A stretch of DNA of 63,546 nucleotides, filler included, from Octopus bimaculoides (lineage: Eukaryota), in assembly GCF_001194135.2 (NCBI RefSeq). It is 4 parts of 4 records of this genome, joined end to end, with 100 filler letters (N's around TTAATTAATTAA, not from the genome) between each part and the next. Parts side by side here need not be neighbours in the genome. Positions count along the whole stretch, not along the records: positions 1 to 29,162 come from NC_069004.1; 3 more parts are not named here. One strand, written 5' to 3'. The notes beneath the pieces were generated by a model, which saw only the letters and a list, made by a program, of their open reading frames with translations, searched no databases and was not told where the DNA came from. Positions 1,045 through 22,827 of the stretch are shown in pieces. The number at the start of each line of letters is the position of its first letter. The stretch's first letter is position 1. The position numbers were made by a program, and so were the translations under genes.

Positions 1045-1332
1045 CGACTTAACAAGTGTTGCAGACGAATGACCATCATCAAATGTGTTGCAATCAACAC
1101 CGTTGGAGTTATTATAGTCGCTGAGCTGTGCACTGGGCTCTCTGTGTTTTTCTTTGGCTTCTGCCTCACTAACGCCGTATCTTTCGCCACTGTCGAACAC
1201 CGTACCTTTGTTTTCATAGACGAACATGGTCTCCGGCGTGTAGGGCGGCGCCGACAACCAGTTGCGTCTATATCCCATTTCTTCTGGATCTTCCGGGATA
1301 CAAAATTTCTGCCTGATGTGTCGCCTTGACCA
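1045..1332 (-). CDS. Transmembrane mucin, cytoplasmic-tail exon (WSRRHIRQKF...YENKG...DYNNS...TLVKS)
   Basis: Acceptor cttcaatgttccag|TGG at 1332 and donor TCG|GTAAGA at 1045. The exon is 288 nt, phase 0/0 and open. It starts with basic stop-transfer-like residues that follow the IIFMVCVL end of the 3625 exon in frame. Confidence 0.75.
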
Positions 1333-1569
1333 CTGGAACATTGAAGCAGGAACTCATTGGAAATTTATTGTTCTTTGTTTGTTTGCTTGTTTTTGTTTGT
1401 TGGATGATGGTTGGATGGTTGGAGAGAATTAGGTTATGGCAGACATGTTGAAAATGTCTGTGAGAGAAGGCAAGGCGTTGGAAAATATGAAGAGCAAGAA
1501 ACATGGCAAAACTGTAAATAGTGAGAGTTGACACGTGAGGGAGAGATAGAATGAGAGAAAGAGAGAGTG

Positions 1570-1601
<32 letters not shown>

Positions 1602-2303
1602 AAAGAGCGGTGGGATGAGCTAGAGATAGAAAAAGAGAATAGGAGAGATAAGTTACACCTTTATTAGTTACGTTGATAGACATATTGAAATATCTTAGAG
1701 AAGAGATGAAATCAATAAGACGATGTAAAGCAGGAGAGAGAGAACAAAAGGAAGAGAGAAGGATAGCGAGATAAGATGTGTGTATATGTATGAAAGAGGC
1801 AAGAGGGTTAATCCTTCGGGAGAAATAAAATGGCAAAGATGCGATATTCATTGGCTGCCATTTCCCGGTAAGCCTTTCGTTGAAAAACATAAACCAGAAA
1901 AATGATCGACTAATATATACAAGGTCACGTTTTAAATGAATATTGAGGAAATAAGAGAGATGGGGAACATGAGTAGAAGGCAGAAGTGGACTGAAAGGTG
2001 ATAAAGGGTAATGAGTTGGGTGAAATAATTGTCAAGAAAGGGTCAAAGAGGAAGTAAGGGAGCGAAGTAAATATTTTAAACAGTCACTGATTTTTCCGTT
2101 CTTATAACGAACCATAAAATTCATAATGTCTTGAAATTGCAAATTTTGAAACGTTAGAATGTTGAGGTGGTATGAAGTGCTACATAAGTAGGTTCTAACA
2201 CCCTATTATTATTCATAAGATTTGGAAATTGCCGAACTGCTGGTAGCACAGCTAATTCCCTTCGAATACTCATCCTAAAAAGGATTGTTAATACAACACT
2301 GGG

Positions 2304-2672
2304 CATGAAAAGAAAATGAAGAAAAATAACATGATTTTATTTAACAGATGCCGGCACAAACTAATACAATTCGAAAGTAAATATTTATCAATCCACTTAA
2401 TAGAAGAAAGGGACCCTATTGTTGGTACATCCAGAAATCCGGAATTTTCAGAAATTCGGGAATACTGTGCAATGTCGTACAATATACAGTATTTTGTACC
2501 GAGTAAAGAGACTCTGTTTTTGATGTTGGTTAATTTGTATACGGTATGTTAAAATTGGTTTTAATGTTTCTTCTACTAAGTGGATTGATAAATATTTACT
2601 TTAGAACTGTATTAGTTTGTGCAGGCATCTGTTAAATAAAATCATGTTATTTTTCTTCATTTTCTTTTCATG
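2304..2672. repeat. ~106-bp inverted repeat (arms 2304-2409 and 2567-2672)
   Basis: The left arm catgaaaagaaaatgaagaaaaataacatg...ccacttaatagaagaaa is the near-exact reverse complement of tttcttctactaagtgg...cattttcttttcatg. Confidence 0.9.
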
Positions 2673-2839
2673 TTATAAACATTATGCTGTTTGCATGGTA
2701 CATTATGATATATTTTAAGAATTATAAAAGGATTAATGAATGTCAAACAGATCCTGCTTCAGAAGTGTATTCATTTGAATCAGATTGATACAATTTTGTT
2801 CTTTACTTTTCATAGTTTATTTTATATCCTAAGTATATA

Positions 2840-2920
2840 TTTCGGTTCCAGAAAATCGGAAAGTCCAAAAATCCGGGCCATTTCCGGCCCTAAGGTTGTC
2901 AGATAGCTGGTCCGGTACTG
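2840..2920. mobile_element. Possible Tc1/pogo-type MITE end
   Basis: Ends ...ggtccggtactg|ta (CAGT terminus next to TA). The ccagaaaatcggaaa motif is also echoed at 2431-2460. The partner TIR was not clearly found. Confidence 0.3.
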
Positions 2921-3624
2921 TACTATATTTTAAAAATATGCTATAGGGTTTCACGAAATAAGTTGTAAAACTCCGATCAAAAGAGATTTCTTTTGGCTCT
3001 ATTTATTTATTTTTGTCAGAACTAAATCTGTAAGTGATGGTTGAGAGAGCGTAACGAACATAGAACACCTTCCGTGCCAGGTACGTGAGACAAGCACAAG
3101 TCTTCAGTTTTTCTAAGCTACGGTCAGAAGTGACGGTGAGTGACGTGTGAGAAACAACATCAACAAAATAAAAAATGATAATAGAAAAAGGACCCTTTTA
3201 ATTCCGGATGAAGGGATGGTTTAAAAGTACAAGAGACAGAACGATTTAAAAGTACGAAAGAGAGAGGAGGAGAGAGAGGGAGAGGGGGAGGGTTAAAAGG
3301 GGTTCTTTGTTGAGGTTTGTTAAGTGATCCTAATGTTGATAAGTCGCAAAATTTGTTGAATGAGTGATGAAATTAAACGAGGTGATTGGGTGAAAAACCA
3401 AGCAAGAGGAATGCAGGTGGGGCTGAACATTAATAAATATGTGGAACAAAAATGTGTTGGTAGTTGTGATGATAGTTGTGTAGTGGTGGTAGTGGTGGTG
3501 GTGGTGATAACAGCAGTTGTTGTAGAAGTGACGGTTGTGATGGTGGGTGGTAGTGAATGAACAAAGAGGATTATGGCAATTATAGTTATGATAGTTATTA
3601 TTGCTGATAATAATTTTTTCTTAC

Positions 3625-3649
3625 CAAAACGCAAACCATGAAGATTATG
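3625..3649 (-). CDS. Transmembrane mucin, 3' end of TM exon (...IIFMVCVL); the remainder lies in N-gap 3650-3935
   Basis: The 25 visible nt read C ATA ATC TTC ATG GTT TGC GTT TTG|GTAAGA. This hydrophobic stretch has a consensus phase-0 donor matching the 1332 acceptor. The far side of the gap reads as a T-rich tract (tagtcttatttt) on the minus strand. Confidence 0.6.
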
Positions 3650-4199
3650 NNNNNNNNNNNNNNNNNNNNNNNNNNNNNNNNNNNNNNNNNNNNNNNNNNN
3701 NNNNNNNNNNNNNNNNNNNNNNNNNNNNNNNNNNNNNNNNNNNNNNNNNNNNNNNNNNNNNNNNNNNNNNNNNNNNNNNNNNNNNNNNNNNNNNNNNNNN
3801 NNNNNNNNNNNNNNNNNNNNNNNNNNNNNNNNNNNNNNNNNNNNNNNNNNNNNNNNNNNNNNNNNNNNNNNNNNNNNNNNNNNNNNNNNNNNNNNNNNNN
3901 NNNNNNNNNNNNNNNNNNNNNNNNNNNNNNNNNNNAAAATAAGACTACTAAATAATCATAATAATAATTAATTCGTTTTATTGGCCACAAGGGCTAATAT
4001 CAATTAAAAACATATAAGGACAAAGACAGGACGAAGGTTACAAAAGGAAAGTTCGTCTAAACAGAGGAAGAAAACGGAGAAAGATATAATAAATAAATAG
4101 ATAAATAAATAGATAAATAAATAAGTAGAACTCCCAAAGGGGGAGGCGCTTCGAAAAAGGAAAGGTTACACGTGGAAAAACCCATAAAACCACGGGAGC

Positions 4200-4420
4200 C
4201 TGGTCTCTGATGCAGGCACTGGGTCTCATGGCTTCTGATTTTAACTGTTTGGAAGTGTTATCATGTATATGTTTTGTCTTGGTATAAAAGATGAGCTACA
4301 GGAAATATTCTGCTCAATACCACAGATTTACTTGTCAATTACTTGACCCTAACCAGTTGAGCATGTCCATTAGTGGCTGACGATATGTGCATCTCTGATC
4401 ACGAGCAGAAGTAGTGAGGG
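4200..4420. repeat. Dispersed repeat family E (reverse-complement copy at 26425-26705)
   Basis: ctcatggcttctgat...ataccacagattt...ccagttgagcatgtcc..tagtggctgacgatatgtgcatctctgatca matches the reverse complement of 26500-26690. Confidence 0.75.
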
Positions 4421-4794
4421 AACACACACACACACACATACACACACACATTTATATATGACAGAATATTCCGTCGAACATGGCGTATGAGTGTTCAGTT
4501 TCTTTACTGAATGACCTGTAGAAATGATTTGTTTATAGTGATCTAATGTATGTGCCATACATTACCTCACTCCCTCCGTCAAACTGACATTGCCTGTATG
4601 GGTGCACAAGTGTGCCACGCGTCAGATGTCGAAATGATCGCAGAGCGACCCGAAGTGGAGAGGGCTGTACAGAAATACATTCAAATAATACATCACAAGC
4701 ATTTAAATCGGTAGGGGGGGGGTTCTAAGGATGTGGGAAGTACTTAGTACAATCTTTTGGATTTCTTTGAGACATGGTTCTCTTGGGATGTTGT

Positions 4795-4887
4795 CTAGAT
4801 GTTTTGCTCAAGAACACAATGCGCCGCCGTCCAGGAATCGAACCAACGATCTAGCAACCGTGAGAGCAGCACCTTAACCACTAGGCC
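4795..4887 (-). mobile_element. tRNA-derived SINE family D, head fragment
   Basis: The reverse complement shows A-box-like ggcctagtggttaag and B-box ggttcgattcc followed by tgtgttcttgagcaaaac. Confidence 0.65.
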
Positions 4888-4896
4888 TTATATATA

Positions 4897-4927
<31 letters not shown>

Positions 4928-5554
4928 CTATTCTCTCTCTCTATATATATAGAGAGAGAGAGAGATAAATAGACAGACGGACAGACAGATAGAAAGATAT
5001 ATNNNNNNNNNNNNNNNNNNNNNNNNNNNNNNNNNNNNNNNNNNNNNNNNNNNNNNNNNNNNNNNNNNNNNNNNNNNNNNNNNNNNNNNNNNNNNNNNNN
5101 NNNNNNNNNNNNNNNNNNNNNNNNNNNNNNNNNNNNNNNNNNNNNNNNNNNNNNNNNNNNNNNNNNNNNNNNNNNNNNNNNNNNNNNNNNNNNNNNNNNN
5201 NNNNNNNNNNNNNNNNNNNNNNNNNNNNNNNNNNNNNNNNNNNNNNNNNNNNNNNNNNNNNNNNNNNNNNNNNNNNNNNNNNNNNNNNNNNNNNNNNNNN
5301 NNNNNNNNNNNNNNNNNNNNNNNNNNNNNNNNNNNNNNNNNNNNNNNNNNNNNNNNNNNNNNNNNNNNNNNNNNNNNNNNNNNNNNNNNNNNNNNNNNNN
5401 NNNNNNNNNNNNNNNNNNNNNNNNNNNNNNNNNNNNNNNNNNNNNNNNNNNNNNNNNNNNNNNNNNNNNNNNNNNNNNNNNNNNNNNNNNNNNNNNNNNN
5501 NNNNNNNNNNNNNNNNNNNNNNNNNNNNNNNNNNNNNNNNNNNNNNNNNNNNNA

Positions 5555-5587
<33 letters not shown>

Positions 5588-5666
5588 CGTTACTTATCCA
5601 AACATATAGTAGTACAGGAGAAATAAATGAAGTAGAAAATACACAGAGAATATATGCTTCACTTAC

Positions 5667-5827
5667 TTGAATGAAAGATGGAAGTTTTATTTATTTCAAA
5701 AAGACCCAAGTAAAAATTGTTCGGCTCCAACTGACTGTAAAAGAACTGGTTGATCATCGTGGAATTTATCTCGCTTCCCTTTGTAAGCACGAAAGAAGCT
5801 TCATAGTAGACCACCACGCTTCCTTGG
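5667..5827 (-). CDS. Transmembrane mucin, SEA domain C-terminal exon (SQGSVVVYYEASFVLTKGSEINSTM...NKTSIFHS)
   Basis: Acceptor ttctcattgtctattccag|C (phase 2) and donor TCA A|GTAAGT (phase 1); 161 nt. Contains the SEA hallmark GSVVV. Confidence 0.9.
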
Positions 5828-6063
5828 CTGGAATAGACAATGAGAACACTGTAATGTCTTGCGATTGGAAGGACTATATGTATATACATAGACAGGAACA
5901 CACGCATGCGCATGTGTGTGCGCGTGTGTGTGTGTGCGTGCGTGTATGTAACTATGCTAGGACACTGCCTTGGAGTGTTAATTTAAACAAATCGACCTCA
6001 ATACCTTCTTGGTAAAGCCTGGTACATACATACATGCATGCATGCATGCATACATACATATAT

Positions 6064-6403
6064 GGTAAAGACCCCTTTCGGTCATGAAAGACTATGGGAT
6101 TGCATCTAGAAAGCTACCCTCTGAGGCACAAGTCTGGGCAAGTTGGTGTATGGAAGACCAGCAGTTGCCCATGCATACCAACCTCCCCTCTCCATGCCAC
6201 CGATGTTATCCAAGGGAAAAGCAAAGGCCGATACAGCTTGGCACCAGTGACGTCGCAACTCATTTCTAGAGGCTGAGTGGACTGGAGCAACGTGAAATAA
6301 AATGTTTCGCTCAAGAACACAACACACGGCCCCGTCTGAGATCCAAACTCACTACTCATGATTGTGAGCCCGACGCTCTAACCACTGAGCCGTGCGCCTT
6401 CAC
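6064..6403 (-). mobile_element. tRNA-derived SINE family D, near full length
   Basis: The minus strand reads gtggttagagcgtcggg head, tgtgttcttgagcgaaacattttatttcacgttgctccagtccactcagc body, and ends catgaccgaaaggggtctttacc. A related copy is at 20880-21110. Confidence 0.7.
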
Positions 6404-6845
6404 CACATACATATATAATGCATATACATAAATACATGCATACACACACACACACACACACGACGTATTTCCACATAGTTTATGTCTAACAAATTCCCTC
6501 GCAAAACTTCGATCGTCCTGGTTCTCACCTAAGATACTGCGCAGTGGGACTGAACCCAACATACACACATGTATAGTTTCAATCAATTTTTATAAGCCAT
6601 TAAAGAAAATCAAGCACTCGCAGTGGAAGTGAACTCGAAAGCAATTTTATATATGTTTATTCTTGAAAAAAATGTTGCGTTCATGATCTTCGCAGGTATT
6701 CCGATATCGTGGCGATCAACGCAGCTAATATTTCTCTTGAACAGTCGTGAGTTGACGGTCGCCAGAAGGCATGCAACTCTCAAACGGTAAATCCCAAACT
6801 TCCAGTCAGAGATATTGAAGTCAATAGCTTTGATCATTTAAGTAT

Positions 6846-7190
6846 TATTAGATGCCTTCGTCAGGTCCTTGGTGTCTCGCTTCGCGAGCGAATCTCAAGA
6901 AACAACATCCGAGAACTATGCCAGCAGCAGCTGACCATTGAAGACCAAGTCCTGCAGAGCAAACTACAATGGTTTGGTCACGTCTGCAAGATGAGCACTG
7001 GAAGACTACCACACCAACGTTTGTGGTGGAAGCGACCCGCACACTAGAGAATCCAGCAGAGCGCACGAAAGAAGACATGGGCGAAACAAATTCAGGAAGA
7101 CCTGAAGTAGCAGCGCCTCGACTTAAAGCATGCTAAGGCCAGTGCCATGGATCGGAAAGAGTGGAATAACATCATCACCAGTATCCGTCA
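6846..7190 (+). mobile_element. RTE-clade LINE, decayed C-terminal fragment
   Basis: Reads RCLRQVLGVSLRERISRNNIRELCQQQLTIEDQVLQSKLQWFGHVCKMSTGRLPHQRLW...KKTWAKQIQEDLK* with in-frame stops. The L-x-W-F-G-H-V-x-x-M motif is typical of RTE ORF ends. Confidence 0.8.
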
Positions 7191-7415
7191 TCCAGCGGCA
7201 CATACAGCAAGGTATTTGGTTGAGAGGACAGCCTCCTCCTCTGGTGGCCAGCGATCGTTCACTTGGCTTCTACGTTAGAGCAAACTTTTAGAGCTATGAA
7301 TTTATGGATACAATTGGAAGAAAGGTGAGTTCAACCAAACTGATTTTCTCAATATACAATATTTGTGGAGAAGAGCTGTTAATGATGTCCAATAATACAA
7401 TGAGTTATGAGTTTC

Positions 7416-7458
<43 letters not shown>

Positions 7459-7515
7459 TAACAAACTCGTGCAGAATCACATTTTATTTTAAAAAAAACA
7501 CGTATGTTTCTTTAC

Positions 7516-7580
7516 CTGAATCTCATACCTCCTATACGTACAAACACTGCGAAGGGGTTCTTCTTCCAAAGATCCGAAAG
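7516..7580 (-). CDS. Transmembrane mucin, SEA domain middle exon (LSDLWKKNPFAVFVRIGGMRF-S)
   Basis: Acceptor gtatttcttgtttgtatgttgaatttctag|CTT (phase 0) and donor TTC AG|GTAAAG (phase 2); 65 nt. It joins both neighbouring exons in frame. It is too short to appear in the ORF track. Confidence 0.85.
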
Positions 7581-8247
7581 CTAGAAATTCAACATACAAA
7601 CAAGAAATACTTAAAAGGTTGTACTTTAAAACAGAATATTAGGGAATCCACCACCGCCCGTCCCGTGACCAAAATTTTGGCGACTATTCAGCTATAAACC
7701 CACCTGTTGACAATTATATTTTTTTGTAAAATTCCACGGGAAGTCTTCAGCTGGGAAAGATTAAGCAAAGCGCAAGAAAGCTTAAAGACCGAAAAAGTAA
7801 TTTAAAGTAAGTTGCCTTTCAATAATATGCTGTAGGGGTATTCAAATCATTACGAAGCACCTGGTTAATTAATGCATTGTAACATTTCCATCAATGTTGT
7901 AGTTTAGTGTGATTGCGTGCATAACCATGAATTTGTGGAATTAATGGATTCGTTAGTTTCTCTCAACAGAAGTGTATTCTGCCAAACCACCCCACCCCCT
8001 CATAGATTGGATTCTTATACATTTGCAGTTCGACCCCCTGCTACTAATATTCCCCATCGCTTGCTTTTGAGAAGACATTCTCATGCTTTGTTTATATACA
8101 GACATTTTACTCTGTGAACAGTTGTTAATGTATAGCTGAGCGCCGGTTGGCATATTTAGAGTAGCGAGCGAAAGAAAAAAGAAAATAGAAGTTTTAATGA
8201 AATGAAATGAAATTACATGTCATAAGAAGAAAAGTTACGAGCCTTAA

Positions 8248-8468
8248 CCCTTTTGTTAACATATTTCTTTTGAAATACACTAATTTTGTTTCAATTAATT
8301 TTAAAAGTGAAGAAGTTAGTGAAATATTTTTGTCATTATTAAGCTGGAGTTTGTGACAAAAAAGTAATATGAAATTTTGAAGAAAGGCTTTAAATTTAAG
8401 TCACTTTATAACGGGAAGTTTGTATCATAGGACCAGCGGCGGTCTGAGGCGGGTAGGTATCAAAAGGG
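8248..8468. mobile_element. piggyBac-type MITE
   Basis: TTAA at 8244-8247 and 8469-8472; terminal inverted repeats cccttttg...caaaaggg. Confidence 0.75.
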
Positions 8469-8518
8469 TTAATGACTATTCTCGGTAAGAGGGTAAGGAA
8501 AAGAAGCCTTAAATTTAA

Positions 8519-8890
8519 CCCTTTAGCGCTTAAACCGGTTATATATAGCCCAAATGTTCTACCTGTTTTCTGTTTAATAAGTACTAGTTGAGCACTGGGG
8601 TCGAGGTAGTCGGCTTAACCCCTGTCCCGATATTAGTGGCCCTGTACCAAAATTTGAAACCAATATTATGCCTATCAAAGGCCGCGAGCTGGCCGAATCG
8701 TTAACACGCCAGCAAAATCCGGCCTTTCGCGTTCACCCTGCAGTGTCTTTCAAAAAAATTGAGAACCTCATTATCGAAATCTCGAAGCTACGTGATAATG
8801 CATGAGTAATTCCAAACAATGTGAATAAATAAGTGTTACATTTGAATAAGCAAGCATTACATTTGGCAGAATAATCTAAGTGATGAAGGG
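8519..8890. mobile_element. Second piggyBac-type MITE with nested SINE-A sequence (~8580-8715)
   Basis: TTAA|ccctttagc...gaaggg|TTAA (8515-8518, 8891-8894). The interior is interrupted by a SINE-A 3' half followed by a SINE-A head. Confidence 0.65.
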
Positions 8891-9299
8891 TTAAATTGAA
8901 TAAAACTAAATTGGAGTGTGAGACTGATCTTTGCTAATGATCAATAGGTTTATGGTGACAACTTCGGATGTGTTTTGGTGTCATCAGACTGCACTTGACT
9001 GGTTCAATATGGCAGCCAACTCTCTTTCAAGATCGTCTTTAAAATGAGTTAACATGAACGAACGAAGGGATGGAATACTATGTCAATTTCCGAACTGCTT
9101 AACGTACCAATCAAATTTCTCAAGATAAACATCCTGCCATTTTGGAAAATAAGTAAGTTTTGGTTCTTTATATTTGAGTTAATATACTCCACAATGAAAA
9201 CAGGTTGACTAGACCCGAAGGTCATTTGTTCATTAACTACTTTCCTTTTACACAAGTAAAACTGAGACTGTTGCTATTTAATTCTTTCAACGATAGACA

Positions 9300-9480
9300 A
9301 AAGGCCTAAATTTTTTAGGGGAGGAGCTAATCAAATACATCGATCACCGTACTCAATCGGTACTTATTTTATCGACTCCGAAACGATGGAAGGCAAAGTC
9401 GACCTCAGCGACATTTGAACTCAGAGCGTAAAGCCGGAATGAAGCATTTTGTTCAGGGTGCAAACGACTCTGCCAGCCCA
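9300..9480 (-). mobile_element. SINE family A
   Basis: ggtacttattttatcgactccgaaacgatggaaggcaaagtcgacctc...atttgaactcagagcgtaa is the reverse of the family A core and head. Confidence 0.8.
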
Positions 9481-9654
9481 GGACCTCACCGCTGCAACTT
9501 AATGACAGCAATAATGGTGACAGCGGTGACAGCGGTGACAGCGGCAAAAGTTTAAAGTTCAGAATGTTGAGAATCTGTAATAACGTGAAAATGGATGATC
9601 TCGGTGGACTAAGATTATTTTAATAATTCATTCAATGTGATGGCATAATTTTGG

Positions 9655-9945
9655 TTTCAAATTTTGGCATAAGGCCAAACATTTGGGGGCAGCTGGTAAG
9701 TCAATGACACCGAACCTAGTGCTCAACTAGTACTTATTTCATCGACTCTGAAAGGATGAAAGGCAAAGATGACCTCGGCGGTATTTGAACTAAGAACGTA
9801 AAGACGGACAAAATGCCGGTGCTCAACTGGTACTTATTTTTTCGACCCCGAAAGAATAAAAGATAGGGTTGATCTTGGCATAAAGACGGACGAAATGCCG
9901 CTAAACATTTTGCCCGACGTACTAAAGATTCTGCGCGCTCGCCGT
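9655..9945 (-). mobile_element. SINE family A, two overlapping copies
   Basis: The core (tacttattt..cgac..gaaag.atgaaaggcaaag) occurs twice, at 9730 and 9830. Confidence 0.75.
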
Positions 9946-10282
9946 CTTGAGGGATATAATATTAATGAGACAAACAAGCAATATGACAAACATGGAGGCA
10001 GATAGAGAAATAGAGAGAGAAACAGACTGAATGGCAGGCAAAAAATTGAAAAAAAAAAATGGAAAAAAAAATAATAAAAGACTGGTAGATTAGAAACTGA
10101 TAGAGACGAAATTAATGGCAAGAGAAATTGATCTGTTGTCTGGTTGGCGGACAGAGACAAGACAGACAGACAGGCAAAGAGACAGTTAGGTAGATGGAGA
10201 TACAGACCAAGACAAAGAAACAGCAATGGCAGACTGGTAGGGAGACAGAGAAAGCTTAGGCGGATAAACAAAGATTACCAAC

Positions 10283-13200
10283 CAATTTATCTAGTTCTTT
10301 CTGCAACTCGAAATATTTTGTAGAGTTTGTTTCTGCAAGTTCTTTCGACCAAACGGCACCTTTTATTATAGTAAATCTTCCACTAATCCTCAGTGGTCTT
10401 CCTTGTATTTCTGCTTCAGGAGTGCTTTTCCATGGAATTTCTGTAGAGAAACTGTTATTTGTAGTAGTAGTAGTATCCTTATCTGTAGTTGTAGTAGAAG
10501 TAGTAGTTGTAGTAGCAACCGTTTCAACAATAATAGCTGTTGTAGTTGCTGCTGTTGTTGATGTAGTTGCTGCTGTTGTTGGTATTGTTGTTGTTGTCGC
10601 TGCAGAAGTACTTGCTTCACTAGTGTCTATTGTACTACGTGCAGTGGAACCCAGTGTGGATGAGGGAGCTATCGATGTGCTTTCTGTTTCTGTTTCATTT
10701 AAGTTCTTGGGTTTTGACTTGGTTGACAAAGTAGGTACAGTGCTGCTTGTGGCGGTTGTCAAATCTTCAGAACTTGTCTCGCTCACTGTTTCATTATCTG
10801 TCGTAGATGATGTGGGAAGCTGGGACCACGATGTTGTAGGTTCGGTCGTAGAGGGAGTGTTTGTAGATCCAGCCGTGGGCGAGGTTGTTGGAAGTTCGGT
10901 TGCAGGAAAGATTATTGGAAGTTCGGTGGTGGGCGAGGTCGTCGGAGGTTCGGTTGTGGGCGGGGTCGTCGGAGGTTCGGTTGTAGGCAAGGTCGTTAGA
11001 GGTTCGGTTGCTGAAGGTTCGGTTGTTANNNNNNNNNNNNNNNNNNNNNNNNNNNNNNNNNNNNNNNNNNNNNNNNNNNNNNNNNNNNNNNNNNNNNNNN
11101 NNNNNNNNNNNNNNNNNNNNNNNNNNNNNNNNNNNNNNNNNNNNNNNNNNNNNNNNNNNNNNNNNNNNNNNNNNNNNNNNNNNNNNNNNNNNNNNNNNNN
11201 NNNNNNNNNNNNNNNNNNNNNNNNNNNNNNNNNNNNNNNNNNNNNNNNNNNNNNNNNNNNNNNNNNNGGAGTTGTAGGTTCAGTTGTGGGAAGGGTTGTT
11301 GTAGCTTCGGATATGGGCGGGGTTATTGAAGGCTCGGTTATGGCTGGGGTTGTAGATTCGGTTGTAGATGGGATTGTTGGAAATTCGATTATAGGCGGGG
11401 TTGTTGGAGGTTCGGTTGTGGGTGGGGTTGCTGGAGGTTCGGTTGTGGGTGGGGTTGTTGGAGGTTCGGTTGTGAGCAGAGTGGTTGCGGTCTGAGTTAT
11501 TAGTGAATCTGTTGAGGGTACGGTTGTGTTCGAAGTCGCTGAAGATTCACTTGTACCCGGGGTGGTTGAAGACTCAAATATTATAGGGATGACTGAAGTT
11601 TCTGTTGTTGCTTCATTCGTGGACGAAGACCCGGATGTAATTGTAGCGGGTAGAGATTGGTGGCTGATCGGGGTGATTGTAGATGGTTCAGATGTGGTTG
11701 AAATGTATGAAGGCTCGTATGTGGTTGGGTTAGTGGGAAATTCCGGTGTGATCGAGGCGGATGCAGACTCGGATGTAGTTGAGCTGGCTACATCAGTTTG
11801 TGAGCTCACAGGTACCTGAACAGTTGAAGAAAAATTTGAAAGTAATGTGTCTGATGTAGTTTGAGATAACGTCGATGATTCATTTACTGTTAGGCCGACT
11901 GATTCATCTGTTGATGCCACAATGGTACTCTGAGTCGTTATAGATGACTCACCAGTGTCCCGAGTGGCTGTTGAAAGATTTGTTATGTCCAGGTTGAGGG
12001 TTGAGGTTTCAGTAATGCTCTGTGTAGCTGCTGAGGCGTCAACAGTGCTCTGGTTGACTGTCAAGAAATCAAATGTGCTTTGGGGAAGAGTTGAGGATTC
12101 TGGTGAGCTTTCGGTGACTTTCGAGAACTCAGTTGTACCCTTTGTTTCTGTTGCAGTCTCAGTTGTATCTTGAAGTGTTTTTGAAGACTCAGATGTGAAG
12201 TCAGTTGCTTGTGTAGTAGGCGTTTCATCTAAGAACTGGGTCGTTGTAGCCTGGGAAGTTGAAAAGGATGTAGTTTCTAAGTCGGATGAAAATAACCCAT
12301 CAGTTAACTGGACGAATGTATGTGCTGCAGGAGTAGAGGGTTCATCTGTACTAGGAATGACTGTAGACGACTCAGACACAGCCTGTATTGGTGTAGTAAT
12401 TTCATTTGTGAATGATTCAGTTATATACTGAGACGACGGTGATGATGAAGATGTTGATGTTGATGATGACGATGACAATTCACCATTGAAAAGAGTGGAC
12501 ACAGGTGCACTTGAAGTAGATGTAAGGTCTTCATTTGTAGACTTTGTGTTCGTAAACTGCTCGACTGTTGACTGGATGGAGTGAACTGATAATGTAACAT
12601 TATTTGATTCAGTAGTTGACTGAAGGTCACTAGTTGGCCCCACTGACTGAACGTCTGTAGGCTGCTCAGTACTAGACTGTGCAGCTGTAGTTGTCCCAAC
12701 CGTAGTCAACTCAACAGTAGCTGTTCCAGCTGTAGTCGAGTGAACTGAAGTTGGTTCGACTGTAGTCGGCTCATTTGTTGACTCAACTGTCATCATCTCA
12801 ACTGTAGTCAGATCAACTGTACTCGGTTCAACTGTACTCGGTTCAACTGTACTCGGTTCAACTGCACTCGGCTCAACTGTACTCGGTTCAAATGTAGTCA
12901 GCTCAATTGTAGTCGGCTCAACTGTGGTCGGCTCAACTGTTGTCCCAACTATAGTTGCCTCAACTGTGCCTATCCGAGGAGTAGTCAGCTCAACTGTAGT
13001 TTTCCCCACTGTAGATGTCGGAGTTGTAGTTGCTTCAGCTGTGCTTCTCTGAGCTGAAGTCGTCTCAACGGTAGCCGGTTCAACTGTAGTCGGCTCAACT
13101 GTAGTTAGCTCAGCTGTTGTCGGTTCAACTGTAGTCGGTTCAACTGTAGTTAGGTCAACTGTAGTCTGTTCAAGTGAAGTCGGCTCAACTGTAGTTGATT

Positions 13201-15681
13201 CAACTTTTATCAGGTCAATTGTTGTTGTCTCAGGTGTAGTCGTCTCAACTGTACTCGGTTCAGTTGTTTCAGTTGTAGTTTTTTCGACTGTATTTATCCG
13301 AGGTGTAGTCGGTTTAACTGTAGTCGAATCAACTGTAGTCGACTCAACTGTAGTCGACTCAACTGTAGTCGACTCAACTGTAGTTAGCTCAACTGTAGTC
13401 GGCTCAACTGTAGTCGATTCAACTGTAGTCGGCTCAACTGTAGTCGGCTCGACTGTAGTTGTCCTAGCTGTCGGCTCACGTGTAGTTAGCTCAACTATAG
13501 GCGGTTCAGTTGTAGTTGTCCTAGCTGTAGTCGGCTCCACTGTCGTCGACTCAACTGTAGTTAGCTCAACTGTAGTCGGCTCAACTGTAGTTAGCTCAAC
13601 TATAGTCGGCTCAACTGTAGTTAGCTCAATTACAGTCGGCTCAACTGTAGTTAGCTCAACTGTAGTCGGCTCGGCTGTAGTTATCTTAGCTGTAGTCGAC
13701 TCAACTGTAGTCGGTTTATTTGTTGTTATCCTAGTTGTCGTGGGCTCGCCTGTTATCCCAACTGTAGTAGCTTCAATTGTATTTATCCGTGCTGTAGTGG
13801 GCTCAACGGTTGTCCCAGCTGTGGCTGCCTCAACTGTGCTTGTTTGAGCTGTAGTTGGCTCATCCGTAATCGAACCAACTGTAGTTGTCCCAGTTGTAGT
13901 TGACTGAACTGTAGTCGGCTCAATTGTTGTGGCCTCAAGTGTAGACGTCTCAACTGTAGTTGTTCTCGCCGTAGTTGTTTCATCTATAGTTGCTTCGGTA
14001 GTACTCCTCTGAGTCATAGCCGGCTCAACTGTTGTGGTCTCTGCTGTAGTCAGCTTGGCTGTAGTTGTCCCCGATGTAGTCGGCTCAAGTGTAGTCGCTT
14101 CAGATGTGGTTGTGTCAGCTACAGCTGTTTCAGCTCCAGGCAGTTTGTTTGTGGTCAATGTAGCTGTAGCTGAGCTAGCTGTAGGTAGTTCAAACGTATC
14201 TCTCTCTGTTGTTGTCGGTTTAACTGTAGTTGTCTCAGCTGTAAACTGAGTAGGAGTTGTCAGTTCAGTTGGTGACTGGGAAGCTGTATGCTGATTAGTT
14301 GCAGCTGGAATTGCAGAAGTCGCATTGCTCTCAGAGTGAGGGACTATAATATCAGATGTTATATGCTGATTGGGTGTGTATTGCTTATCTGCAGACGAAA
14401 TAGTTGCAAATGATTCGGAGACAGACTGAGTAGCTGTAGACTGAGTGTGTGTAGGCTGAGTAGTTACAGATGAACTCATTCTAGACTGAGTCCCTATAGA
14501 AGCGATTTCTTTTGCTAGAGACTCAGCAGAAGAGGGAGTGACTTTTGACTTAGAGTTAGTACTCTGATTAATCGTAGATTGTGTAGTTGTAGACTCTGGC
14601 ACTGGAGTTTGAGAGTCTGTAGATTGATCTGTCACGGATTTGGCAGGCGAAGACTGCTTGGTCGTTGACTGAGTTGTCGCAGTTTGGGTGGCTGCAGCGG
14701 CATTAATTGTGGATTGAGTAACTATCGACTGAGCTACCATGGTCGTAAGAACTACAGATAAACTAGGTTTAGTGCTAACATCTGAGGAAACATCATTTGG
14801 ATGATTCGTTGACAATTTTGTATTTGTTGTTGGATGAGTCCCTGAGAATATTGTTGGTAATGATGGTGGTATGGTTTTACCGACAAGATTTGCGTTATTG
14901 AGAATGGCGCCCTCTTCTGTTGCAACCCTTTTGGAAGTTGTCGGAATCACCCGTGAAATCGTTGTTTTTGATGCTATCGTTTGCGGCACTGAAGTTATCT
15001 GCTGCTTGATCGCTGTCGTCTGGTATTCAACATAGCCTCCTAACGAGTAATTAGAATCACTCTGTTTTAGATTCAATTTCACTGTTTCTGGAGAGACACC
15101 AAACGAATTATCATTGTCTTCTGAATAAGTTTTCAATGAAAATTCTTGCCGTGAATCATCATTCGTTTGGTTATTTTGCTTTTCTTCTTCATGCAACGAT
15201 TCACTGCGAACTGTGGGGTTCATTGTAGCTACAAAATGTTCCGCTCCCTTCATAATAACTGGGGTATTTTCTTCCAAATGTGATTTGTCTGAAGTAACAT
15301 TTTTCAGATTTGTCACTTCGTGATCGGTGGATGTGATGATTCTCGAATCGTTGTTAATTGGAGCCGTTGTTTTCAATGCTTCCCGTGCTTGATCTACAGC
15401 ATTCGCTGAAGTAATTTCTAACAGAGGATGTGCAACGGTTGCTAGTGACAACGAACTTGGCGTCGTTACAAACCGATGTACATCGTTAGGTTTTAAAGTC
15501 GTTTGACTAAGAGAAGTTGCTGTATGAAAGATATTTGAGACGAAACTTAAATGCTTCTTTTCATCTAAACCTGGTTCAGTCGAACTAAAAGAATCCGGAA
15601 ATTTTGAAAACGACAACTCTTCGCCTTGAGAGAACTGATTGGTTGGTGAAGTATAGTTTCCAGTAAAATCTGCTCGGGACT
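10283..15681 (-). CDS. Transmembrane mucin, giant Pro/Thr/Ser exon plus start of SEA domain (...PLRISGRFTIIKGAVWSKELAETNSTKYFELQKELDKL)
   Basis: About 1800 codons open on the minus strand, interrupted by an N-gap at 11029-11267. Extremely T/S/E/P/V-rich. Acceptor ttttttccttctattacag|AG (phase 1) and donor TTG|GTTGGT (phase 0). The ORF-track extension to 15865 is SINE-derived. Confidence 0.92.
10905..11470 (-). repeat. Coding ~27-bp tandem repeat (TEPPTTPPT-type nonapeptide), partly in a gap
   Basis: Repeated ggaggttcggttgtgggtggggttgtt on the plus strand; TEPPTTPPT / TEPPATPPT / TELPTTSPT in translation. Confidence 0.85.
12775..14110 (-). repeat. Coding 15-bp tandem repeat (V-E-[P/S/L]-T-T pentapeptide)
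   Basis: Dozens of ctcaactgtagtcgg-like units on the plus strand; VEPTT/VESTT/VELTT in translation. Confidence 0.9.
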
Positions 15682-15724
15682 CTGTAATAGAAGGAAAAAA
15701 AGCTTTAGTATTATAATGGTTTCC

Positions 15725-15910
15725 AATTTTGGGGAACAGGGCCAGCAATTTTAGGGGGCGAGGGTTGTCGGAGTAATTTATTTTATCGACCCCGAAAGGA
15801 TGAAAGGCAAAGTCGACTTCGGTGGAATCTGAACTCAAAACATAAAACCGGAAGAAAAGACGCAAAGTATTTTGTCCGACATGCTAATGATTCAGCCAGC
15901 TCACCGCCTT
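15725..15910 (-). mobile_element. SINE family A immediately upstream of the giant-exon acceptor
   Basis: atcgaccccgaaaggatgaaaggcaaagtcgac...gccagctcaccgcctt; followed by (AAT)n at 15911-15999. Confidence 0.85.
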
Positions 15911-15926
15911 AATAATAATAATAATG

Positions 15927-15999
<73 letters not shown>

Positions 16000-16000
<1 letters not shown>

Positions 16001-16207
16001 TCTTTCTACTTAAGGCACAAGGCATGAAATTTGGCGGGAGGAGGTAAGTCGATTACATCGACCCCAGTGTTTCACTGGTACTTAATTTATTGACCCCGAA
16101 AGAAAGACAGAAAAAGTCGACCTCGGTGGTATTTGAACTCAAAACGTGAACACGGACGAAATACTGCTAAGCATTTCGTCCGGCGTGTTAACGATTCTGT
16201 CAGCTCG
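16000..16207 (-). mobile_element. SINE family A (tail B)
   Basis: ggcacaaggc...taagtcgattacatcgaccccagtg...gtcgacctcggtggtatttgaactc...gccagctcgc. Confidence 0.85.
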
Positions 16208-16844
16208 CAAATTGACAAAATGAAAATTGACAAAATGATCTGTCGGTGAAGACGGCCCACAAATCCATCGTAAATAAAAACGAACTAGACATTACATCCT
16301 TGAATGCAGCAGCTAGCTAGACAGAAAGACAGAGATAAAGAAGCGAAAATGATCGACCAAGCAGTGGTACTTTATTTATCGACCCTCGGAAGGAAGAAAG
16401 GCAAAGTTGACCTGGACGGGAATTTGAACGCATAACATCAAGAGTCCGAACTGATCATGGTTACAAAACAACAAGACACGTATACAAGATGTGGGGGTGG
16501 TTTGTGTGTATGGATATGTTTAATGATGTGTACGATGTTTGTGTGTGTGTGTGTGTAAATAAAGGGCGTGAAGATGGGGAAGAGCACCACACCTAAAACG
16601 TAAATATATTAAGATATTTTATTCAAGAAAGAATTCCATTGATTTCCTCGTTTAGAATATATTAAGGAATGTGTAGGTGTGTGTTGTGAGTGCTATGTGC
16701 ACATGTCACTTCTCTATTTCTGTAATGGTCGTTCATATTTCAGTCAATTAGTCAATCTCTCTTACTTTTTCCTTTCCTCTGATTCAATATTTCTTTCTCC
16801 CTTTCTTTCGTTTAATCTACTACTTCTCTTTCTCCTACATTTTA

Positions 16845-16876
<32 letters not shown>

Positions 16877-17538
16877 AAGGCGGCGAGCTGGCAGAAACAT
16901 TAGCACGCCGGGCGAAATGCTTAGCAGTATTTCGTCTGCCGTTACGTTCTTTTTTCCATCTAATTATTTCTTCTATATCTCTACGCCTACCGTAGAAAAA
17001 ATCCTACATAATGTAATAAGAAAATCACTTTGGAACACCTCGTCACCTTGTCCCCGAATTCATGTCTATTTATAACCTCTAACTCGTCAGCAGTCTCACA
17101 CTTTCGTACCTCAACTTTTAAGACCGGTGTTGCCTGCCTGCCTGCCTGCCTGCCTGCTTGGAAAACCACATTTAAGAAAATAAATTACTATCTCCACCAC
17201 CCGTCCACGATTAAAACAACGACAAATACATTGCTGTGATTGGTTATTACACGTGTCCAAGGTTTTCTTAACCTGAAAACGAAAATCCGGTGAATATATA
17301 CATATAAAGCACGACTAGTTCGTTAAAAGCATTGTATTATAGTGTACTATATTATAGTACACCAGTTAAGTAGAATTCCATTAAGAGGCGACTCTTCATA
17401 TGTCGTTGATAAGACTGCAGATGGGAATTATTATTATTATTATTATTATTAATAAATATTTTAAGATGACTGCGATTAAGTCAGCCAGATATGAAATCGC
17501 GTGCGTGCATGCATGCACACATATGTATATGTATATAT

Positions 17539-17769
17539 ATTTCTTTATTGCCCACAGGGGGCTAACCATAGAGGGGACAAACAAGGACAGACAATGAGAT
17601 TAAGTCGATTACATCGACCCCAGTGCGTAACTGGTACTTATTTAATCGACCCCGAAAGGATGAAAGGCAAAGTCGACCTCGGCGGAATTTGAACTCAGAA
17701 CGTAGCGGCAGACGAAATACTGCTAAGCATTTCGCCCGGCGTGCTAATGTTTCTGCCAGTTCGCCGCCT
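17539..17769 (-). mobile_element. SINE family A, full length (tail A)
   Basis: Complete head, core and tail (tatttctttattgcccacaggggg...); near-identical to the 19002 and 27048 copies. Confidence 0.9.
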
Positions 17770-17907
17770 GTATCGACCGTGTGATGTACTAAGGAGCCAT
17801 TCTCGTCACCTCGCTTCGCACGGACGTTAATCCATATATAAGCATACATGTATATGTTTGTATGTATGTATGTATGTATGTATGTATGTATGCATACATG
17901 CATGTAT

Positions 17908-17951
<44 letters not shown>

Positions 17952-19901: not shown

Positions 19902-19937
<36 letters not shown>

Positions 19938-20077
19938 CAGATTTATGTGTGAATGTGTGTGTGTGTGTGTGTATATATATACATGCATACTTACATATAA
20001 ATGTATATACCTATGTATATATGCATGTATATAATATAGATTTATGTATTATGTATGCGTGTGTATATGTGTATGTG

Positions 20078-20111
<34 letters not shown>

Positions 20112-22027: not shown

Positions 22028-22311
<284 letters not shown>

Positions 22312-22826: not shown

Positions 22827-22827
22827 C

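What the first reader, a model, noticed from the sequence alone, without database searches (positions are those of the whole stretch)
1045..15681. MUC1-like cell-surface mucin architecture in an apparent cephalopod: PTS - cleavable SEA - TM - Tyr-signalling tail
Seen in sequence: five exons with matching splice phases assemble a ~1750-aa Thr/Ser/Pro ectodomain, a full SEA domain, a hydrophobic segment ending IIFMVCVL and a 96+-aa basic-start cytoplasmic region. Established: this PTS-SEA-TM-tail plan defines vertebrate membrane mucins (MUC1, MUC3, MUC12, MUC13, MUC17). Inference: this is an invertebrate counterpart, ancient or convergent, that may build the glycocalyx of skin, sucker, gill or gut and signal on shedding. 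ORF callers see only the big exon, so the locus is likely annotated as an uncharacterised or 'mucin-like' fragment.
Basis: partly seen in the sequence, partly recalled or inferred. Interest (0 to 1): 0.72.

Follow-up and report, generated by a model that had tools for sequence, protein, structure and literature searches.

The report
Octopus-type membrane mucin gene, MUC1-like
The minus strand carries most of a real gene for a membrane-anchored mucin: a very long sugar-bearing stalk, a self-cleaving-type SEA domain, a membrane anchor and a conserved cytoplasmic tail. It belongs to a family found across molluscs and spiders that shares its SEA-to-membrane cassette with vertebrate MUC1.

Summary
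On the minus strand, exons 15681-10283, 7580-7516 and 5827-5667 join without stops. Only the full join gives a Pfam SEA hit above threshold (29.1 bits, cut-off 26.4). A confident AlphaFold model (pLDDT 90) has solved SEA domains as its seven best PDB matches. A GSVVV motif sits in the beta2-beta3 hairpin.

Exon 1 encodes at least 1,719 known residues (41% Ser+Thr, no Cys) with TTVEP and TTEPPTTPP tandem arrays.

Two transcript-like contigs from another cephalopod carry one ORF, PTS-SEA-TM-tail-stop. It is collinear with all five exons and breaks at the proposed borders. A deposited 433-aa partial model uses the same joins.

Caveats:
- Gap 3650-3935 hides the exon-4 acceptor and about 30 residues, most of the TM helix.
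- No signal-peptide exon was found.
- The last exon (PQRTTTL*) lies outside the piece.
- Cleavage, glycosylation and Tyr signalling are inferred.

Relatives occur in gastropods, bivalves, spiders and vertebrate MUC1. They share a P-x-W-[GA]-I-A start to the membrane segment.

Verdict: a new member of a known kind, with a moderately interesting evolutionary implication.

The parts
10283..15681 (-). Exon 1 (5399 nt). It encodes a 1799-codon Ser/Thr/Pro-rich ectodomain, of which 1719 residues are known: S+T 41%, P 8%, no Cys. It also encodes the first ~35 residues of the SEA domain. Acceptor in phase 1, donor GTTGGT in phase 0.
   Evidence: The ORF extension upstream of 15681 (to 15865) is a SINE copy, so the acceptor at 15681 is the likely exon start.
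12685..13992 (-). Tandem array with a 15-nt unit (also periods 30 and 45) encoding about 60-80 copies of the pentapeptide TTVEP/TTVES. This is the core mucin repeat.
   Evidence: Tandem Repeats Finder; translation.
10875..11474 (-). Tandem array with a 27-nt unit encoding TTEPPTTPP, interrupted by assembly gap 11029-11267. Same repeat and same single open frame on both sides.
10283..10386 (-). SEA domain, part 1 (beta1-alpha1: ...RISGRFTIIKGAVWSKELAETNSTKYFELQKELDKL).
   Evidence: Pfam PF01390 match starts at this residue. AlphaFold E6-17, H23-26, H31-49.
7516..7580 (-). Exon 2 (65 nt): SEA part 2 (LSDLWKKNPFAVFVRIGGMRF + 2 nt).
   Evidence: the SEA hit is lost if this exon is skipped. tblastn of the orthologue hits 7580-7516.
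5667..5827 (-). Exon 3 (161 nt): SEA part 3 (S-QGSVVVYYEASFVL...KTSIFHS + 1 nt). Ends in phase 1.
5809..5823 (-). GSVVV motif. Gly 5823-5821 | Ser 5820-5818 is the predicted autoproteolysis site, located in the beta2-beta3 hairpin of the model.
   Evidence: Sequence. G and S are invariant in alignments A1/A3. The hairpin lies between E54-65 and E70-79.
3625..3649 (-). Visible 3' end of exon 4: the last 8 residues of the transmembrane helix (IIFMVCVL), donor gtaaga, phase 0.
   Evidence: The orthologue reads IAVIVCGSILLLFIVFMVCVL|WSGRH.
3650..3935 (.). Assembly gap that hides the exon-4 acceptor and about 30 residues: the linker, the P-x-W-G-I-A motif and the first two thirds of the TM helix.
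   Evidence: The orthologue has 38 residues (about 113 nt) between the E3 end and the E4 end.
1045..1332 (-). Exon 5 (288 nt, 96 aa): cytoplasmic tail WSRRHIRQKFCIPEDPEEMGYRRNWLSAPPYTPETMFVYENKG... Donor gtaaga, so at least one more exon follows outside the piece.
   Evidence: Against a sister-species genomic contig the exon is 94.8% identical with no indels and 9 synonymous / 5 non-synonymous codon changes. The flanking introns are 88% identical with many indels.
1258..1293 (-). Conserved juxtamembrane block EDPEEMGYRRNW (family consensus EDP[DE]D-x-GYRRSW).
   Evidence: Alignments A1, A5.
1210..1218 (-). Conserved Tyr motif Y-E-N (family [AS]-Y-[DE]-N). It has the form of a pY-x-N SH2 (Grb2-type) site; that reading is inference.
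   Evidence: The Tyr is invariant in A1 and the Asn nearly invariant in A5.
5003..5553 (.). Assembly gap inside the intron between exons 3 and 4, bordered by (TA)n.

Best explanation
This is most of a gene, on the minus strand, for a type I membrane-tethered mucin.

Shown:
- One 5.4-kb exon encodes a cysteine-free Ser/Thr/Pro-rich stalk of more than 1,700 residues, containing two tandem-repeat arrays. The same exon runs straight into the start of a SEA domain.
- Two small exons complete the SEA domain.
- A further exon ends a hydrophobic membrane segment.
- The next exon starts with a basic stop-transfer sequence and encodes a conserved cytoplasmic tail.

Inferred from what is established for MUC1 and MUC3/12/13/17:
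- The stalk is densely O-glycosylated and forms an extended glycocalyx brush.
- The SEA domain cleaves itself at G|SVVV during folding. The stalk subunit then stays non-covalently attached to the membrane subunit and can be shed under force.
- The tail couples to scaffolds and signalling. It carries conserved EDPxxxGYRRxW and Y-[DE]-N motifs. In the deposited model and in orthologues it ends in T-x-L, the form of a class I PDZ ligand.

The SEA-TM-juxtamembrane cassette is homologous to that of a family spread over gastropods, bivalves, cephalopods and spiders, and to vertebrate MUC1. It is not a convergent look-alike. The repeat stalk itself evolves too fast to say the same.
For: - Exon structure and frames.
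- Mucin composition and tandem arrays.
- SEA by sequence: Pfam 29.1 bits against a 26.4 cut-off, and only for the full join. A mollusc profile hits the SEA domains of ADGRF1, MUC16, TMPRSS11D and MUC1 in PDB.
- SEA by structure: AlphaFold pLDDT 90.3, pTM 0.82, with a beta-alpha-beta-beta-alpha-beta order. Foldseek's top 7 are all SEA domains: MUC16 1ivz (TM 0.79), TMPRSS6 (0.83), 2e7v.
- Cross-species transcript-like contigs L001 and L002 carry one ORF, PTS-SEA-TM-tail-stop, at 41% identity. They are collinear with all five exons, and the HSP ends fall on the proposed borders.
- The deposited model UPI00071D3D72 is identical over 426 aa and uses the same joins.
- Purifying selection on exon 5.
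- Family: 62 relatives at E<=1e-3. They include Aplysia 'mucin-3A, partial', proteins from Mya, Mytilus, Bulinus, Lymnaea, spiders and a centipede, and newt and catfish mucin-1.
- Shared TM-start motif in 30 of 61 relatives.
- hhalign of protostome against vertebrate TM+tail profiles: 97.5% probability, E 7e-12.
Against: - No signal-peptide exon was found in 15682-29162. The 5' end is therefore unknown and type I topology is inferred.
- Only 8 TM residues are visible. The rest, with the exon-4 acceptor, lies in a gap.
- The exon-1 donor is weak (GTTGGT).
- The Pfam SEA score is only 2.7 bits above the cut-off.
- No same-species RNA evidence was accessible. L001 and L002 are taken to be transcripts because they lack all the introns.
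- The last coding exon is outside the piece.
- The hhalign score over a TM segment may be inflated by hydrophobic composition.
- Autoproteolysis, O-glycosylation, phosphorylation and PDZ binding are all untested.
- The classical MUC1 tail motifs are absent.
Confidence: 0.85

Rival explanations
1. Same gene, but the SEA domain is only a structural spacer and does not autoproteolyse, as in most MUC16 SEA repeats. The mucin would then be a single chain, shed only by proteases.
For: By structure the closest solved matches are MUC16 and TMPRSS6 SEA domains. Cleavage depends on hairpin strain that sequence alone cannot prove. Many family members vary the motif: GSIIA, GSVKV, GSVIA.
Against: The exact MUC1-type G-S-V-V-V is present. 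Gly and Ser are invariant across the family alignments. The motif sits in the predicted beta2-beta3 hairpin.
Confidence: 0.2
2. The resemblance to vertebrate membrane mucins is convergent. An ancient, widespread SEA domain was independently placed next to a PTS stalk and a TM anchor in protostomes and in vertebrates.
For: PTS repeats arise easily de novo. Pairwise similarity to MUC1 is low (23-30% identity, E 1e-5 to 2e-6). The classical MUC1 tail motifs are absent. A published view holds that MUC1 arose in mammals and shares only the SEA domain with other genes (PMC9564314).
Against: Similarity continues beyond SEA into the membrane segment. P-x-W-[GA]-I-A-[VL]-[IL]-V opens the TM in molluscs, spiders and vertebrate MUC1, followed by a C-x-R-R-type stop-transfer and a conserved Tyr. 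hhalign over TM+tail alone gives 97.5%.
Confidence: 0.3
3. The protein is not a barrier or glycocalyx mucin. It would be a specialised surface protein, for example a gamete or adhesion protein like the sea-urchin sperm protein that gave SEA its name, or a force sensor, that happens to carry a mucin stalk.
For: No expression data were available. The first ~300 residues of exon 1 are less S/T-rich (23-28%) and non-repetitive, and could be a binding region. No homologue of that part was found.
Against: No recognisable binding domain anywhere (Pfam), no Cys, and more than 1,400 residues at 40-52% S+T with tandem repeats. This is the definition of a mucin domain.
Confidence: 0.15
4. The model is an assembly or annotation chimera, or a pseudogene. 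The big exon and the SEA-TM-tail exons would not be one functional transcript.
For: Three assembly gaps fall in the locus. The weak GTTGGT donor ends exon 1. The deposited model covers only the 3' third.
Against: The SEA domain starts inside the same exon and ORF as the PTS. A 5.4-kb ORF stays open. An orthologous ORF joins PTS to tail. Exon 5 is under purifying selection.
Confidence: 0.04

Closest known systems
Vertebrate MUC1 (mucin-1)
   Same: Both have a single membrane-proximal SEA domain with G|SVVV and no EGF or Cys-rich domains. The TM segment opens with P-x-W-G-I-A (MUC1-like proteins read VPGWGIALLV; this family reads IPNWGIAVIV). A basic stop-transfer follows, then a 70-110-aa Tyr-containing tail.
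   Different: The tail motifs differ. There is no CQC and no YHPM / YTNP-type MUC1 block; instead the tail has EDPxxxGYRRxW and Y-[DE]-N and ends in T-x-L. The repeats are 5- and 9-residue units rather than 20. Identity is only 17-25%. This is not a demonstrable one-to-one orthologue.
Mollusc family auto-annotated under mixed names: Aplysia XP_035825750.1 'mucin-3A, partial'; Mya arenaria WAR29917.1 'SEA domain-containing protein'; Mytilus XP_052084114.1 'serine-rich adhesin for platelets-like'; Bulinus KAH9493034.1; Lymnaea CAL1529958.1
   Same: Same cassette throughout: SEA with GS[VI][VI]V, a linker, P-x-W-[GA]-IAVIVCG TM, C-x-RR, KY, EDP[DE]D, GYRRSW, YDN, and a C-terminus T-x-L. This is the family the window's gene belongs to.
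   Different: The number of SEA domains varies: 1 here, 4-5 in Aplysia and Bulinus, and an extra N-terminal one in Mytilus. Cephalopods have W instead of C before the RR. Gastropods have longer tails ending WETRL.
MUC3 / MUC12 / MUC13 / MUC17
   Same: PTS-SEA-TM-tail plan. A C-terminal class I PDZ-type ending, as known for MUC3/12/17 (my own knowledge, not tested here).
   Different: Those mucins have EGF-like domains flanking the SEA domain. Here the whole ectodomain has no Cys at all and Pfam finds no EGF.
MUC16
   Same: Its SEA domains are the best structural matches to the model (1ivz TM 0.79, 7sa9). It also has a huge PTS stalk.
   Different: MUC16 has many tandem SEA repeats, mostly without the cleavage motif. 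Here there is one SEA domain, with GSVVV (one search found no further SEA exon in the piece).
Spider, centipede and whitefly SEA-TM mucin-like proteins (e.g. Uloborus XP_054706651.1 'mucin-2-like', Parasteatoda XP_042900120.1, Strigamia T1J7D7, Bemisia XP_018903121)
   Same: SEA followed by a PQWAIAVIV TM start and an A-Y-E-N tail motif in spiders.
   Different: More distant (E 1e-4 to 1e-9). The juxtamembrane block is different and there is no T-x-L end.
Yeast signalling mucin Msb2
   Same: A transmembrane mucin with a SEA domain that feeds MAPK pathways (abstract of bioRxiv 10.64898/2026.05.06.723240). It is a functional analogy for 'mucin as sensor'.
   Different: No sequence relation was tested or claimed here.

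Membership tests
SEA-type transmembrane mucins (MUC1/3/12/13/16/17 class) | Long PTS (mucin) domain rich in Ser/Thr/Pro, usually with tandem repeats | tested here: met
   1719 known residues, S+T 41%, P 8%, up to 70% STP in 100-aa blocks. 15-nt and 27-nt tandem arrays.
SEA-type transmembrane mucins (MUC1/3/12/13/16/17 class) | SEA domain between the stalk and the membrane | tested here: met
   Pfam PF01390 at 29.1 bits against a 26.4 cut-off, covering profile positions 4-97 of 106. Join-dependent. AlphaFold plus Foldseek: the top 7 matches are all SEA domains.
SEA-type transmembrane mucins (MUC1/3/12/13/16/17 class) | G|S[VI]VV autoproteolysis motif, and actual cleavage | tested here: inconclusive
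   The motif GSVVV is present at 5809-5823 in the predicted hairpin. Cleavage itself cannot be tested with these tools.
SEA-type transmembrane mucins (MUC1/3/12/13/16/17 class) | Single transmembrane helix after the SEA domain | tested here: inconclusive
   Only IIFMVCVL is visible before gap 3650-3935. The orthologue shows a full helix, IAVIVCGSILLLFIVFMVCVL. A search for the sister-species exon found nothing.
SEA-type transmembrane mucins (MUC1/3/12/13/16/17 class) | N-terminal signal peptide (type I topology) | tested here: inconclusive
   Exon 1 starts in phase 1, so upstream exon(s) must exist. No convincing candidate lies in 15682-29162, which itself contains gaps. The Mytilus relative does have a signal peptide.
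SEA-type transmembrane mucins (MUC1/3/12/13/16/17 class) | Dense O-glycosylation | not testable with these tools
   Composition only.
MUC1 orthologue (strict) | MUC1 cytoplasmic-domain motifs (CQC, YHPM-type, YTNP-type, SAGNGGSSLS block) | tested here: not met
   The tail aligns to MUC1-like tails only at the stop-transfer and one Tyr. The vertebrate hits carry SYHPMxEYPxYxTHxRY; the window does not.
MUC1 orthologue (strict) | P-G-W-G-I-A-L-L-V start of the TM segment | tested here: inconclusive
   The residue stretch is hidden in the gap in the window. The cephalopod orthologue has PNWGIAVIV, and 30 of 61 relatives carry the motif.
MUC3/12/13/17 subgroup | EGF-like domains flanking the SEA domain | tested here: not met
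   No Cys in the ectodomain. No EGF hit.
MUC16 subgroup | Many tandem SEA repeats | tested here: not met
   One SEA domain. tblastn with 61 relatives finds no other SEA-coding exon in the piece.
Mollusc SEA-TM mucin-like family (Aplysia XP_035825750.1 and others) | Tail blocks [CW]-x-RR ... K[YF] ... EDP[DE][DE]-x-GYRR[SN]W ... Y[DE]N | tested here: met
   The window tail reads WSRRHIRQKFCIPEDPEEMGYRRNW...VYENKG. tblastn from seven family members hits 1332-1078.
Mollusc SEA-TM mucin-like family (Aplysia XP_035825750.1 and others) | C-terminus ...KTT-x-L (T-x-L-COOH) | tested here: inconclusive
   Not in the window. Present as PQRTTTL in the deposited model, which is identical to the window over 426 aa.

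The most novel reading that the evidence does not exclude
The membrane-proximal cassette of the MUC1-C subunit is an ancient bilaterian module. It comprises a SEA domain with G|SVVV, a linker, a TM segment opening with P-x-W-[GA]-I-A, a Cys/basic stop-transfer and a tail with a conserved Tyr. It survives in molluscs (including this octopus-type gene), chelicerates and vertebrates. If so, SEA-type membrane mucins were not a vertebrate or mammalian invention, and cephalopods offer an invertebrate system to study mucin shedding and signalling.
Probability: 0.55. Interest if true: 0.6.

Novelty: new member of a known kind. Interest (0 to 1): 0.45.

Why it matters
Membrane mucins of the MUC1 type are usually treated as vertebrate proteins. 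Recent reviews go further: they say MUC1 arose in mammals and shares only the SEA domain with other genes (PMC9564314; PMC12958477).

This locus and its relatives show the whole plan in protostomes: stalk, self-cleaving-type SEA, a specific TM start and a conserved tail. These proteins sit in databases under misleading automatic names ('mucin-3A', 'mucin-5AC', 'serine-rich adhesin for platelets-like'). I found no paper in the held library that describes them.

For cephalopod biology, the gene is a candidate for the epithelial glycocalyx of skin, suckers, gills or gut.

For annotation, the case shows how assembly gaps in repeats split a ~2,000-aa mucin. What remains is a 433-aa fragment whose SEA score (25.2 bits) falls just under Pfam's cut-off.

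Tried and rejected
- Single-sequence phmmer of the joined SEA against PDB sequences gave only chance hits. A family profile was needed.
- A scan for a signal-peptide exon (ATG, hydrophobic core, phase-1 GT donor) across 15682-29162 gave only two unconvincing loci, at 19445/19442-19352 (two start codons) and 28099-27955.
- A search for the last exon (PQRTTTL*) in all six frames of the piece found nothing. An acceptor scan of 1-1044 found nothing plausible.
- A homology search with the first 320 residues of exon 1 gave no hit. The tool also failed to list the near-identical P0012/P0082 cluster, so absence there is weak evidence.
- A search for a sister-species ORF covering the hidden part of exon 4 found no candidate.
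- An exact look-up of the deposited model P0082 on contigs found nothing on record. I could therefore not name the species from a record. 'Octopus' rests on the repeat family, on mollusc relatives and on my own knowledge.
- Rfam found no RNA family in the piece.
- Lang et al. 2007 (PMC2042186) and Pei & Grishin 2017 (PMC5326570) are not held. What I recall of them is not used as evidence.
- I considered that the +1 ORF after the stop in L001/L002 matches the long gastropod tails. BLASTP shows no significant similarity.
- I considered MUC3/13/17-type and MUC16-type membership and rejected both: no EGF or Cys, and a single SEA domain.
Full report
**What is in the sequence**

The longest ORF in the piece lies on the minus strand, 15865-10256, and is 1869 codons long. 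Its first 60 codons are a copy of a short interspersed repeat that occurs at least six times in the piece. The likely exon start is therefore the strong acceptor at 15681 (tttttttccttctattacag|A, phase 1).

From 15681 to 10283 the exon encodes 1799 codons, 1719 of them known. The composition is Ser+Thr 41%, Pro 8% and no cysteine. There are two true tandem arrays:
- A 15-nt unit (TTVEP) over 12685-13992.
- A 27-nt unit (TTEPPTTPP) over 10875-11474.

The last ~35 codons of this exon are no longer mucin-like (…RISGRFTIIKGAVWSKELAETNSTKYFELQKELDKL). They end at a GT donor (TTG|gttggt).

**The gaps, tested first**

- Gap 11029-11267 sits inside the 27-nt array. On each side exactly one frame is open (0 stops against 5-8). 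It is the same coordinate frame and encodes the same repeat. An in-frame continuation is well supported. Only the copy number is unknown.
- Gap 5003-5553 is intronic, next to (TA)n.
- Gap 3650-3935 matters most. It removes the acceptor and most of the fourth exon. Only 25 nt remain (…IIFMVCVL, donor gtaaga).

**Exon joins**

- E1|E2 (10283/7580) is phase 0.
- E2 is 65 nt. Its last two bases plus the first base of E3 (5827) make a Ser codon.
- E3 ends at 5667 in phase 1 with a consensus donor (CAA|gtaagt).
- E4 ends in phase 0 and E5 (1332-1045) continues WSRRHIRQKF… for 96 codons, up to another donor (TCG|gtaaga).

E1+E2+E3 contain no stop. Three of the four junction phases are verified. The E3/E4 junction cannot be tested.

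**Is the joined segment a SEA domain?**

Yes, by three routes.
- Pfam PF01390 scores 29.1 bits (E 1.1e-6; cut-off 26.4) over profile positions 4-97 of 106.
- The score depends on the exact join. E1 alone gives 15.3 bits, E1+E2 17.2, E3 alone nothing, and E1+E3 without E2 nothing.
- An AlphaFold model built on a nine-sequence alignment has pLDDT 90.3 and pTM 0.82, with the order beta-alpha-beta-beta-alpha-beta. Its seven best Foldseek matches in PDB are all SEA domains: MUC16 1ivz (TM 0.79), MUC16 SEA5, TMPRSS6 (TM 0.83) and 2e7v.

A mollusc family profile also hits the SEA domains of ADGRF1, MUC16, TMPRSS11D and MUC1 by sequence.

The motif G-S-V-V-V (5823-5809) lies just 3' of the E2/E3 junction and falls in the beta2-beta3 hairpin of the model. 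That is where MUC1 cleaves itself. The MUC1 mechanism is established knowledge, summarised in PMC9564314.

**Independent support for the gene model**

A protein search returned one cluster, P0001. It comes from assemblies of two public sequencing runs (L001, 2308 nt; L002, 1817 nt).

In both contigs a single uninterrupted frame reads T/S-rich stalk – SEA (…FAKGSVVVQYK…) – linker – IPNWGIAVIVCGSILLLFIVFMVCVL – WSGRHIRQKFRIPEDPEDVGYRRNW… – PQKTTTL-stop.

tblastn places it on the window collinearly, with breaks exactly at the proposed borders:
- 10813-10286
- 7580-7516
- ~5827-5668
- 3648-3625
- 1332-1078

About 800 nt there correspond to 9.2 kb here, so I read these contigs as spliced transcripts of an orthologue from another cephalopod. 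They also show what the gap hides: about 30 residues of linker and helix.

A deposited protein, UniParc UPI00071D3D72 (P0082, 433 aa), is identical to my join over 426 residues. It starts right after gap 11029-11267 and uses the same E1/E2/E3 and E4/E5 joins. It joins E3 directly to base 3647, a gap-edge artefact that drops the hidden residues. It then adds PQRTTTL from an exon that is not in this piece.

A genomic contig from a closely related species (L003) shows exon 5 at 94.8% identity, with no indels and 9 synonymous against 5 non-synonymous codon changes. The flanking introns are 88% identical with many indels.

**Relatives**

An exhaustive phmmer search with P0001 found 62 proteins at E<=1e-3. 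Those I could name include:
- Aplysia 'mucin-3A, partial'
- Bulinus, Lymnaea and Plakobranchus hypothetical proteins
- Mya 'SEA domain-containing protein'
- Mytilus 'serine-rich adhesin for platelets-like', which has a signal peptide
- Spider 'mucin-2-like' and 'mucin-5AC'
- A centipede protein and a whitefly protein
- Newt and catfish mucin-1

The alignments show a cassette conserved well beyond the SEA domain:
- F-S-x-G-S-V-I-V
- A linker, then P-x-W-[GA]-I-A-V-I-V-C-G opening the membrane segment
- C-x-R-R, then K-Y, then E-D-P-[DE]-D-x-G-Y-R-R-S-W, then [AS]-Y-[DE]-N
- In molluscs, a C-terminus ending in T-x-L

The TM-start motif is present in 30 of 61 relatives. That count includes eight vertebrate MUC1-like proteins with PGWGIALLV. 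Because the query contained the motif, the count is partly circular.

A profile-profile comparison restricted to TM+tail, protostome against vertebrate, gives 97.5% probability and E 7e-12 over 52 columns. Hydrophobic bias may flatter this figure. Pairwise BLASTP to MUC1-like proteins is weak but runs from the SEA domain to the P-x-W-G-I-A motif.

**Mechanism**

Shown: a stalk, a SEA domain, a membrane-segment end and a conserved tail are encoded by one locus.

Inferred:
- Type I topology.
- Dense O-glycosylation, making an extended brush.
- Folding-coupled cleavage at G|S, giving a non-covalent two-subunit mucin that can shed its stalk under force.
- A tail that engages adaptors. Y-E-N has the form of a pY-x-N SH2 site, and T-x-L the form of a class I PDZ ligand.

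None of these steps can be tested with these tools.

**Membership**

The gene meets the sequence-level definition of a SEA-type membrane mucin.
- It is MUC1-like rather than MUC3/13/17-like: no EGF and no Cys.
- It is MUC1-like rather than MUC16-like: a single SEA domain.
- It does not carry the MUC1 tail motifs, so I do not call it a MUC1 orthologue.
- It clearly belongs to the mollusc family above.

**Novelty**

The locus is already partly modelled in a database, and relatives are auto-named as mucins. I found no paper in the held library that describes SEA-type membrane mucins in molluscs. Recent reviews state that MUC1 arose in mammals and shares only the SEA domain with other genes.

I rate this a new member of a known kind. 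The more interesting reading is that the MUC1-C-type cassette is ancient in Bilateria.

**Limits**

- No 5' end or signal peptide was found.
- The 3' exon is outside the piece.
- Most of the TM helix is in a gap (one search failed to recover it from a sister species).
- No same-species RNA evidence was available.
- The species could not be read from a record.

Noticed in passing
window 9371-9406, 15785-15820, 17645-17680 (minus); 19092-19127, 26818-26853, 27132-27167 (plus): At least six copies of a short interspersed repeat (core GAGGTCGACTTTGCCTTTCATCCTTTCGGGGTCGAT; 0 expected by chance). The copy at 15785-15820 supplies the apparent 5' extension of the big ORF, so the ORF start at 15865 is not coding. 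From my own knowledge this repeat looks like the abundant SINE of octopus genomes.
   Followed up: partly
window about 6830-7270, plus strand (inside intron 2, antisense to the gene): Decayed 3' end of a non-LTR retrotransposon ORF (…LQWFGHVCKMSTGRLPHQRLWWKRPAH*…KKTWAKQIQEDLK*…DRKEWNNIITS) with in-frame stops.
   Followed up: partly
L001 1224-1418 and L002 1251-1445 (orthologue contigs): A 64-codon ORF in the +1 frame overlaps the stop codon of the mucin ORF (MRSRRRKQPRYDDLL…DDFVEVSLDDFDDEDKK…DIFDTWM*). It is intact in both contigs and has only 4 differences in 195 nt, against 24 in 798 for the main CDS. It could be an alternative long-tail isoform. BLASTP to the long gastropod tails is not significant. 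The corresponding exon is outside the window.
   Followed up: partly
window 3647 / 5667 (deposited model P0082 = UPI00071D3D72): The deposited 433-aa model joins exon 3 directly to base 3647, two bases inside the gap edge and with no AG acceptor. It therefore lacks about 30 residues, including most of the TM helix. Its Pfam SEA score (25.2) falls just below the cut-off (26.4), so automatic annotation would miss the domain.
   Followed up: yes
P0006 (newt XP_078526568.1 'mucin-1 isoform X2'), P0041 (catfish 'Mucin-1'): Non-mammalian vertebrate proteins named mucin-1 carry the classical MUC1 TM and tail (PGWGIALLV…SYHPMNEYPSYQTH…). The newt protein has eight SEA repeats. This is at odds with review statements that MUC1 first appeared in mammals.
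   Followed up: partly
P0021 (MAG Saprospiraceae MCW5920774.1, 2646 aa): A bacterial protein appears among the hits with 26 short matched stretches to the tail region of the query (residues 191-224). It is probably a repeat or low-complexity match. I did not examine it.
   Followed up: no
window 15905-16010; 7425-7470; 17952-18929 and flanks; 28480-28820: Long microsatellites: (AAT)n upstream of exon 1, (GT)n in intron 2, and (CA/TG)n and TATG-type repeats beside the other gaps. They likely caused the assembly breaks.
   Followed up: no
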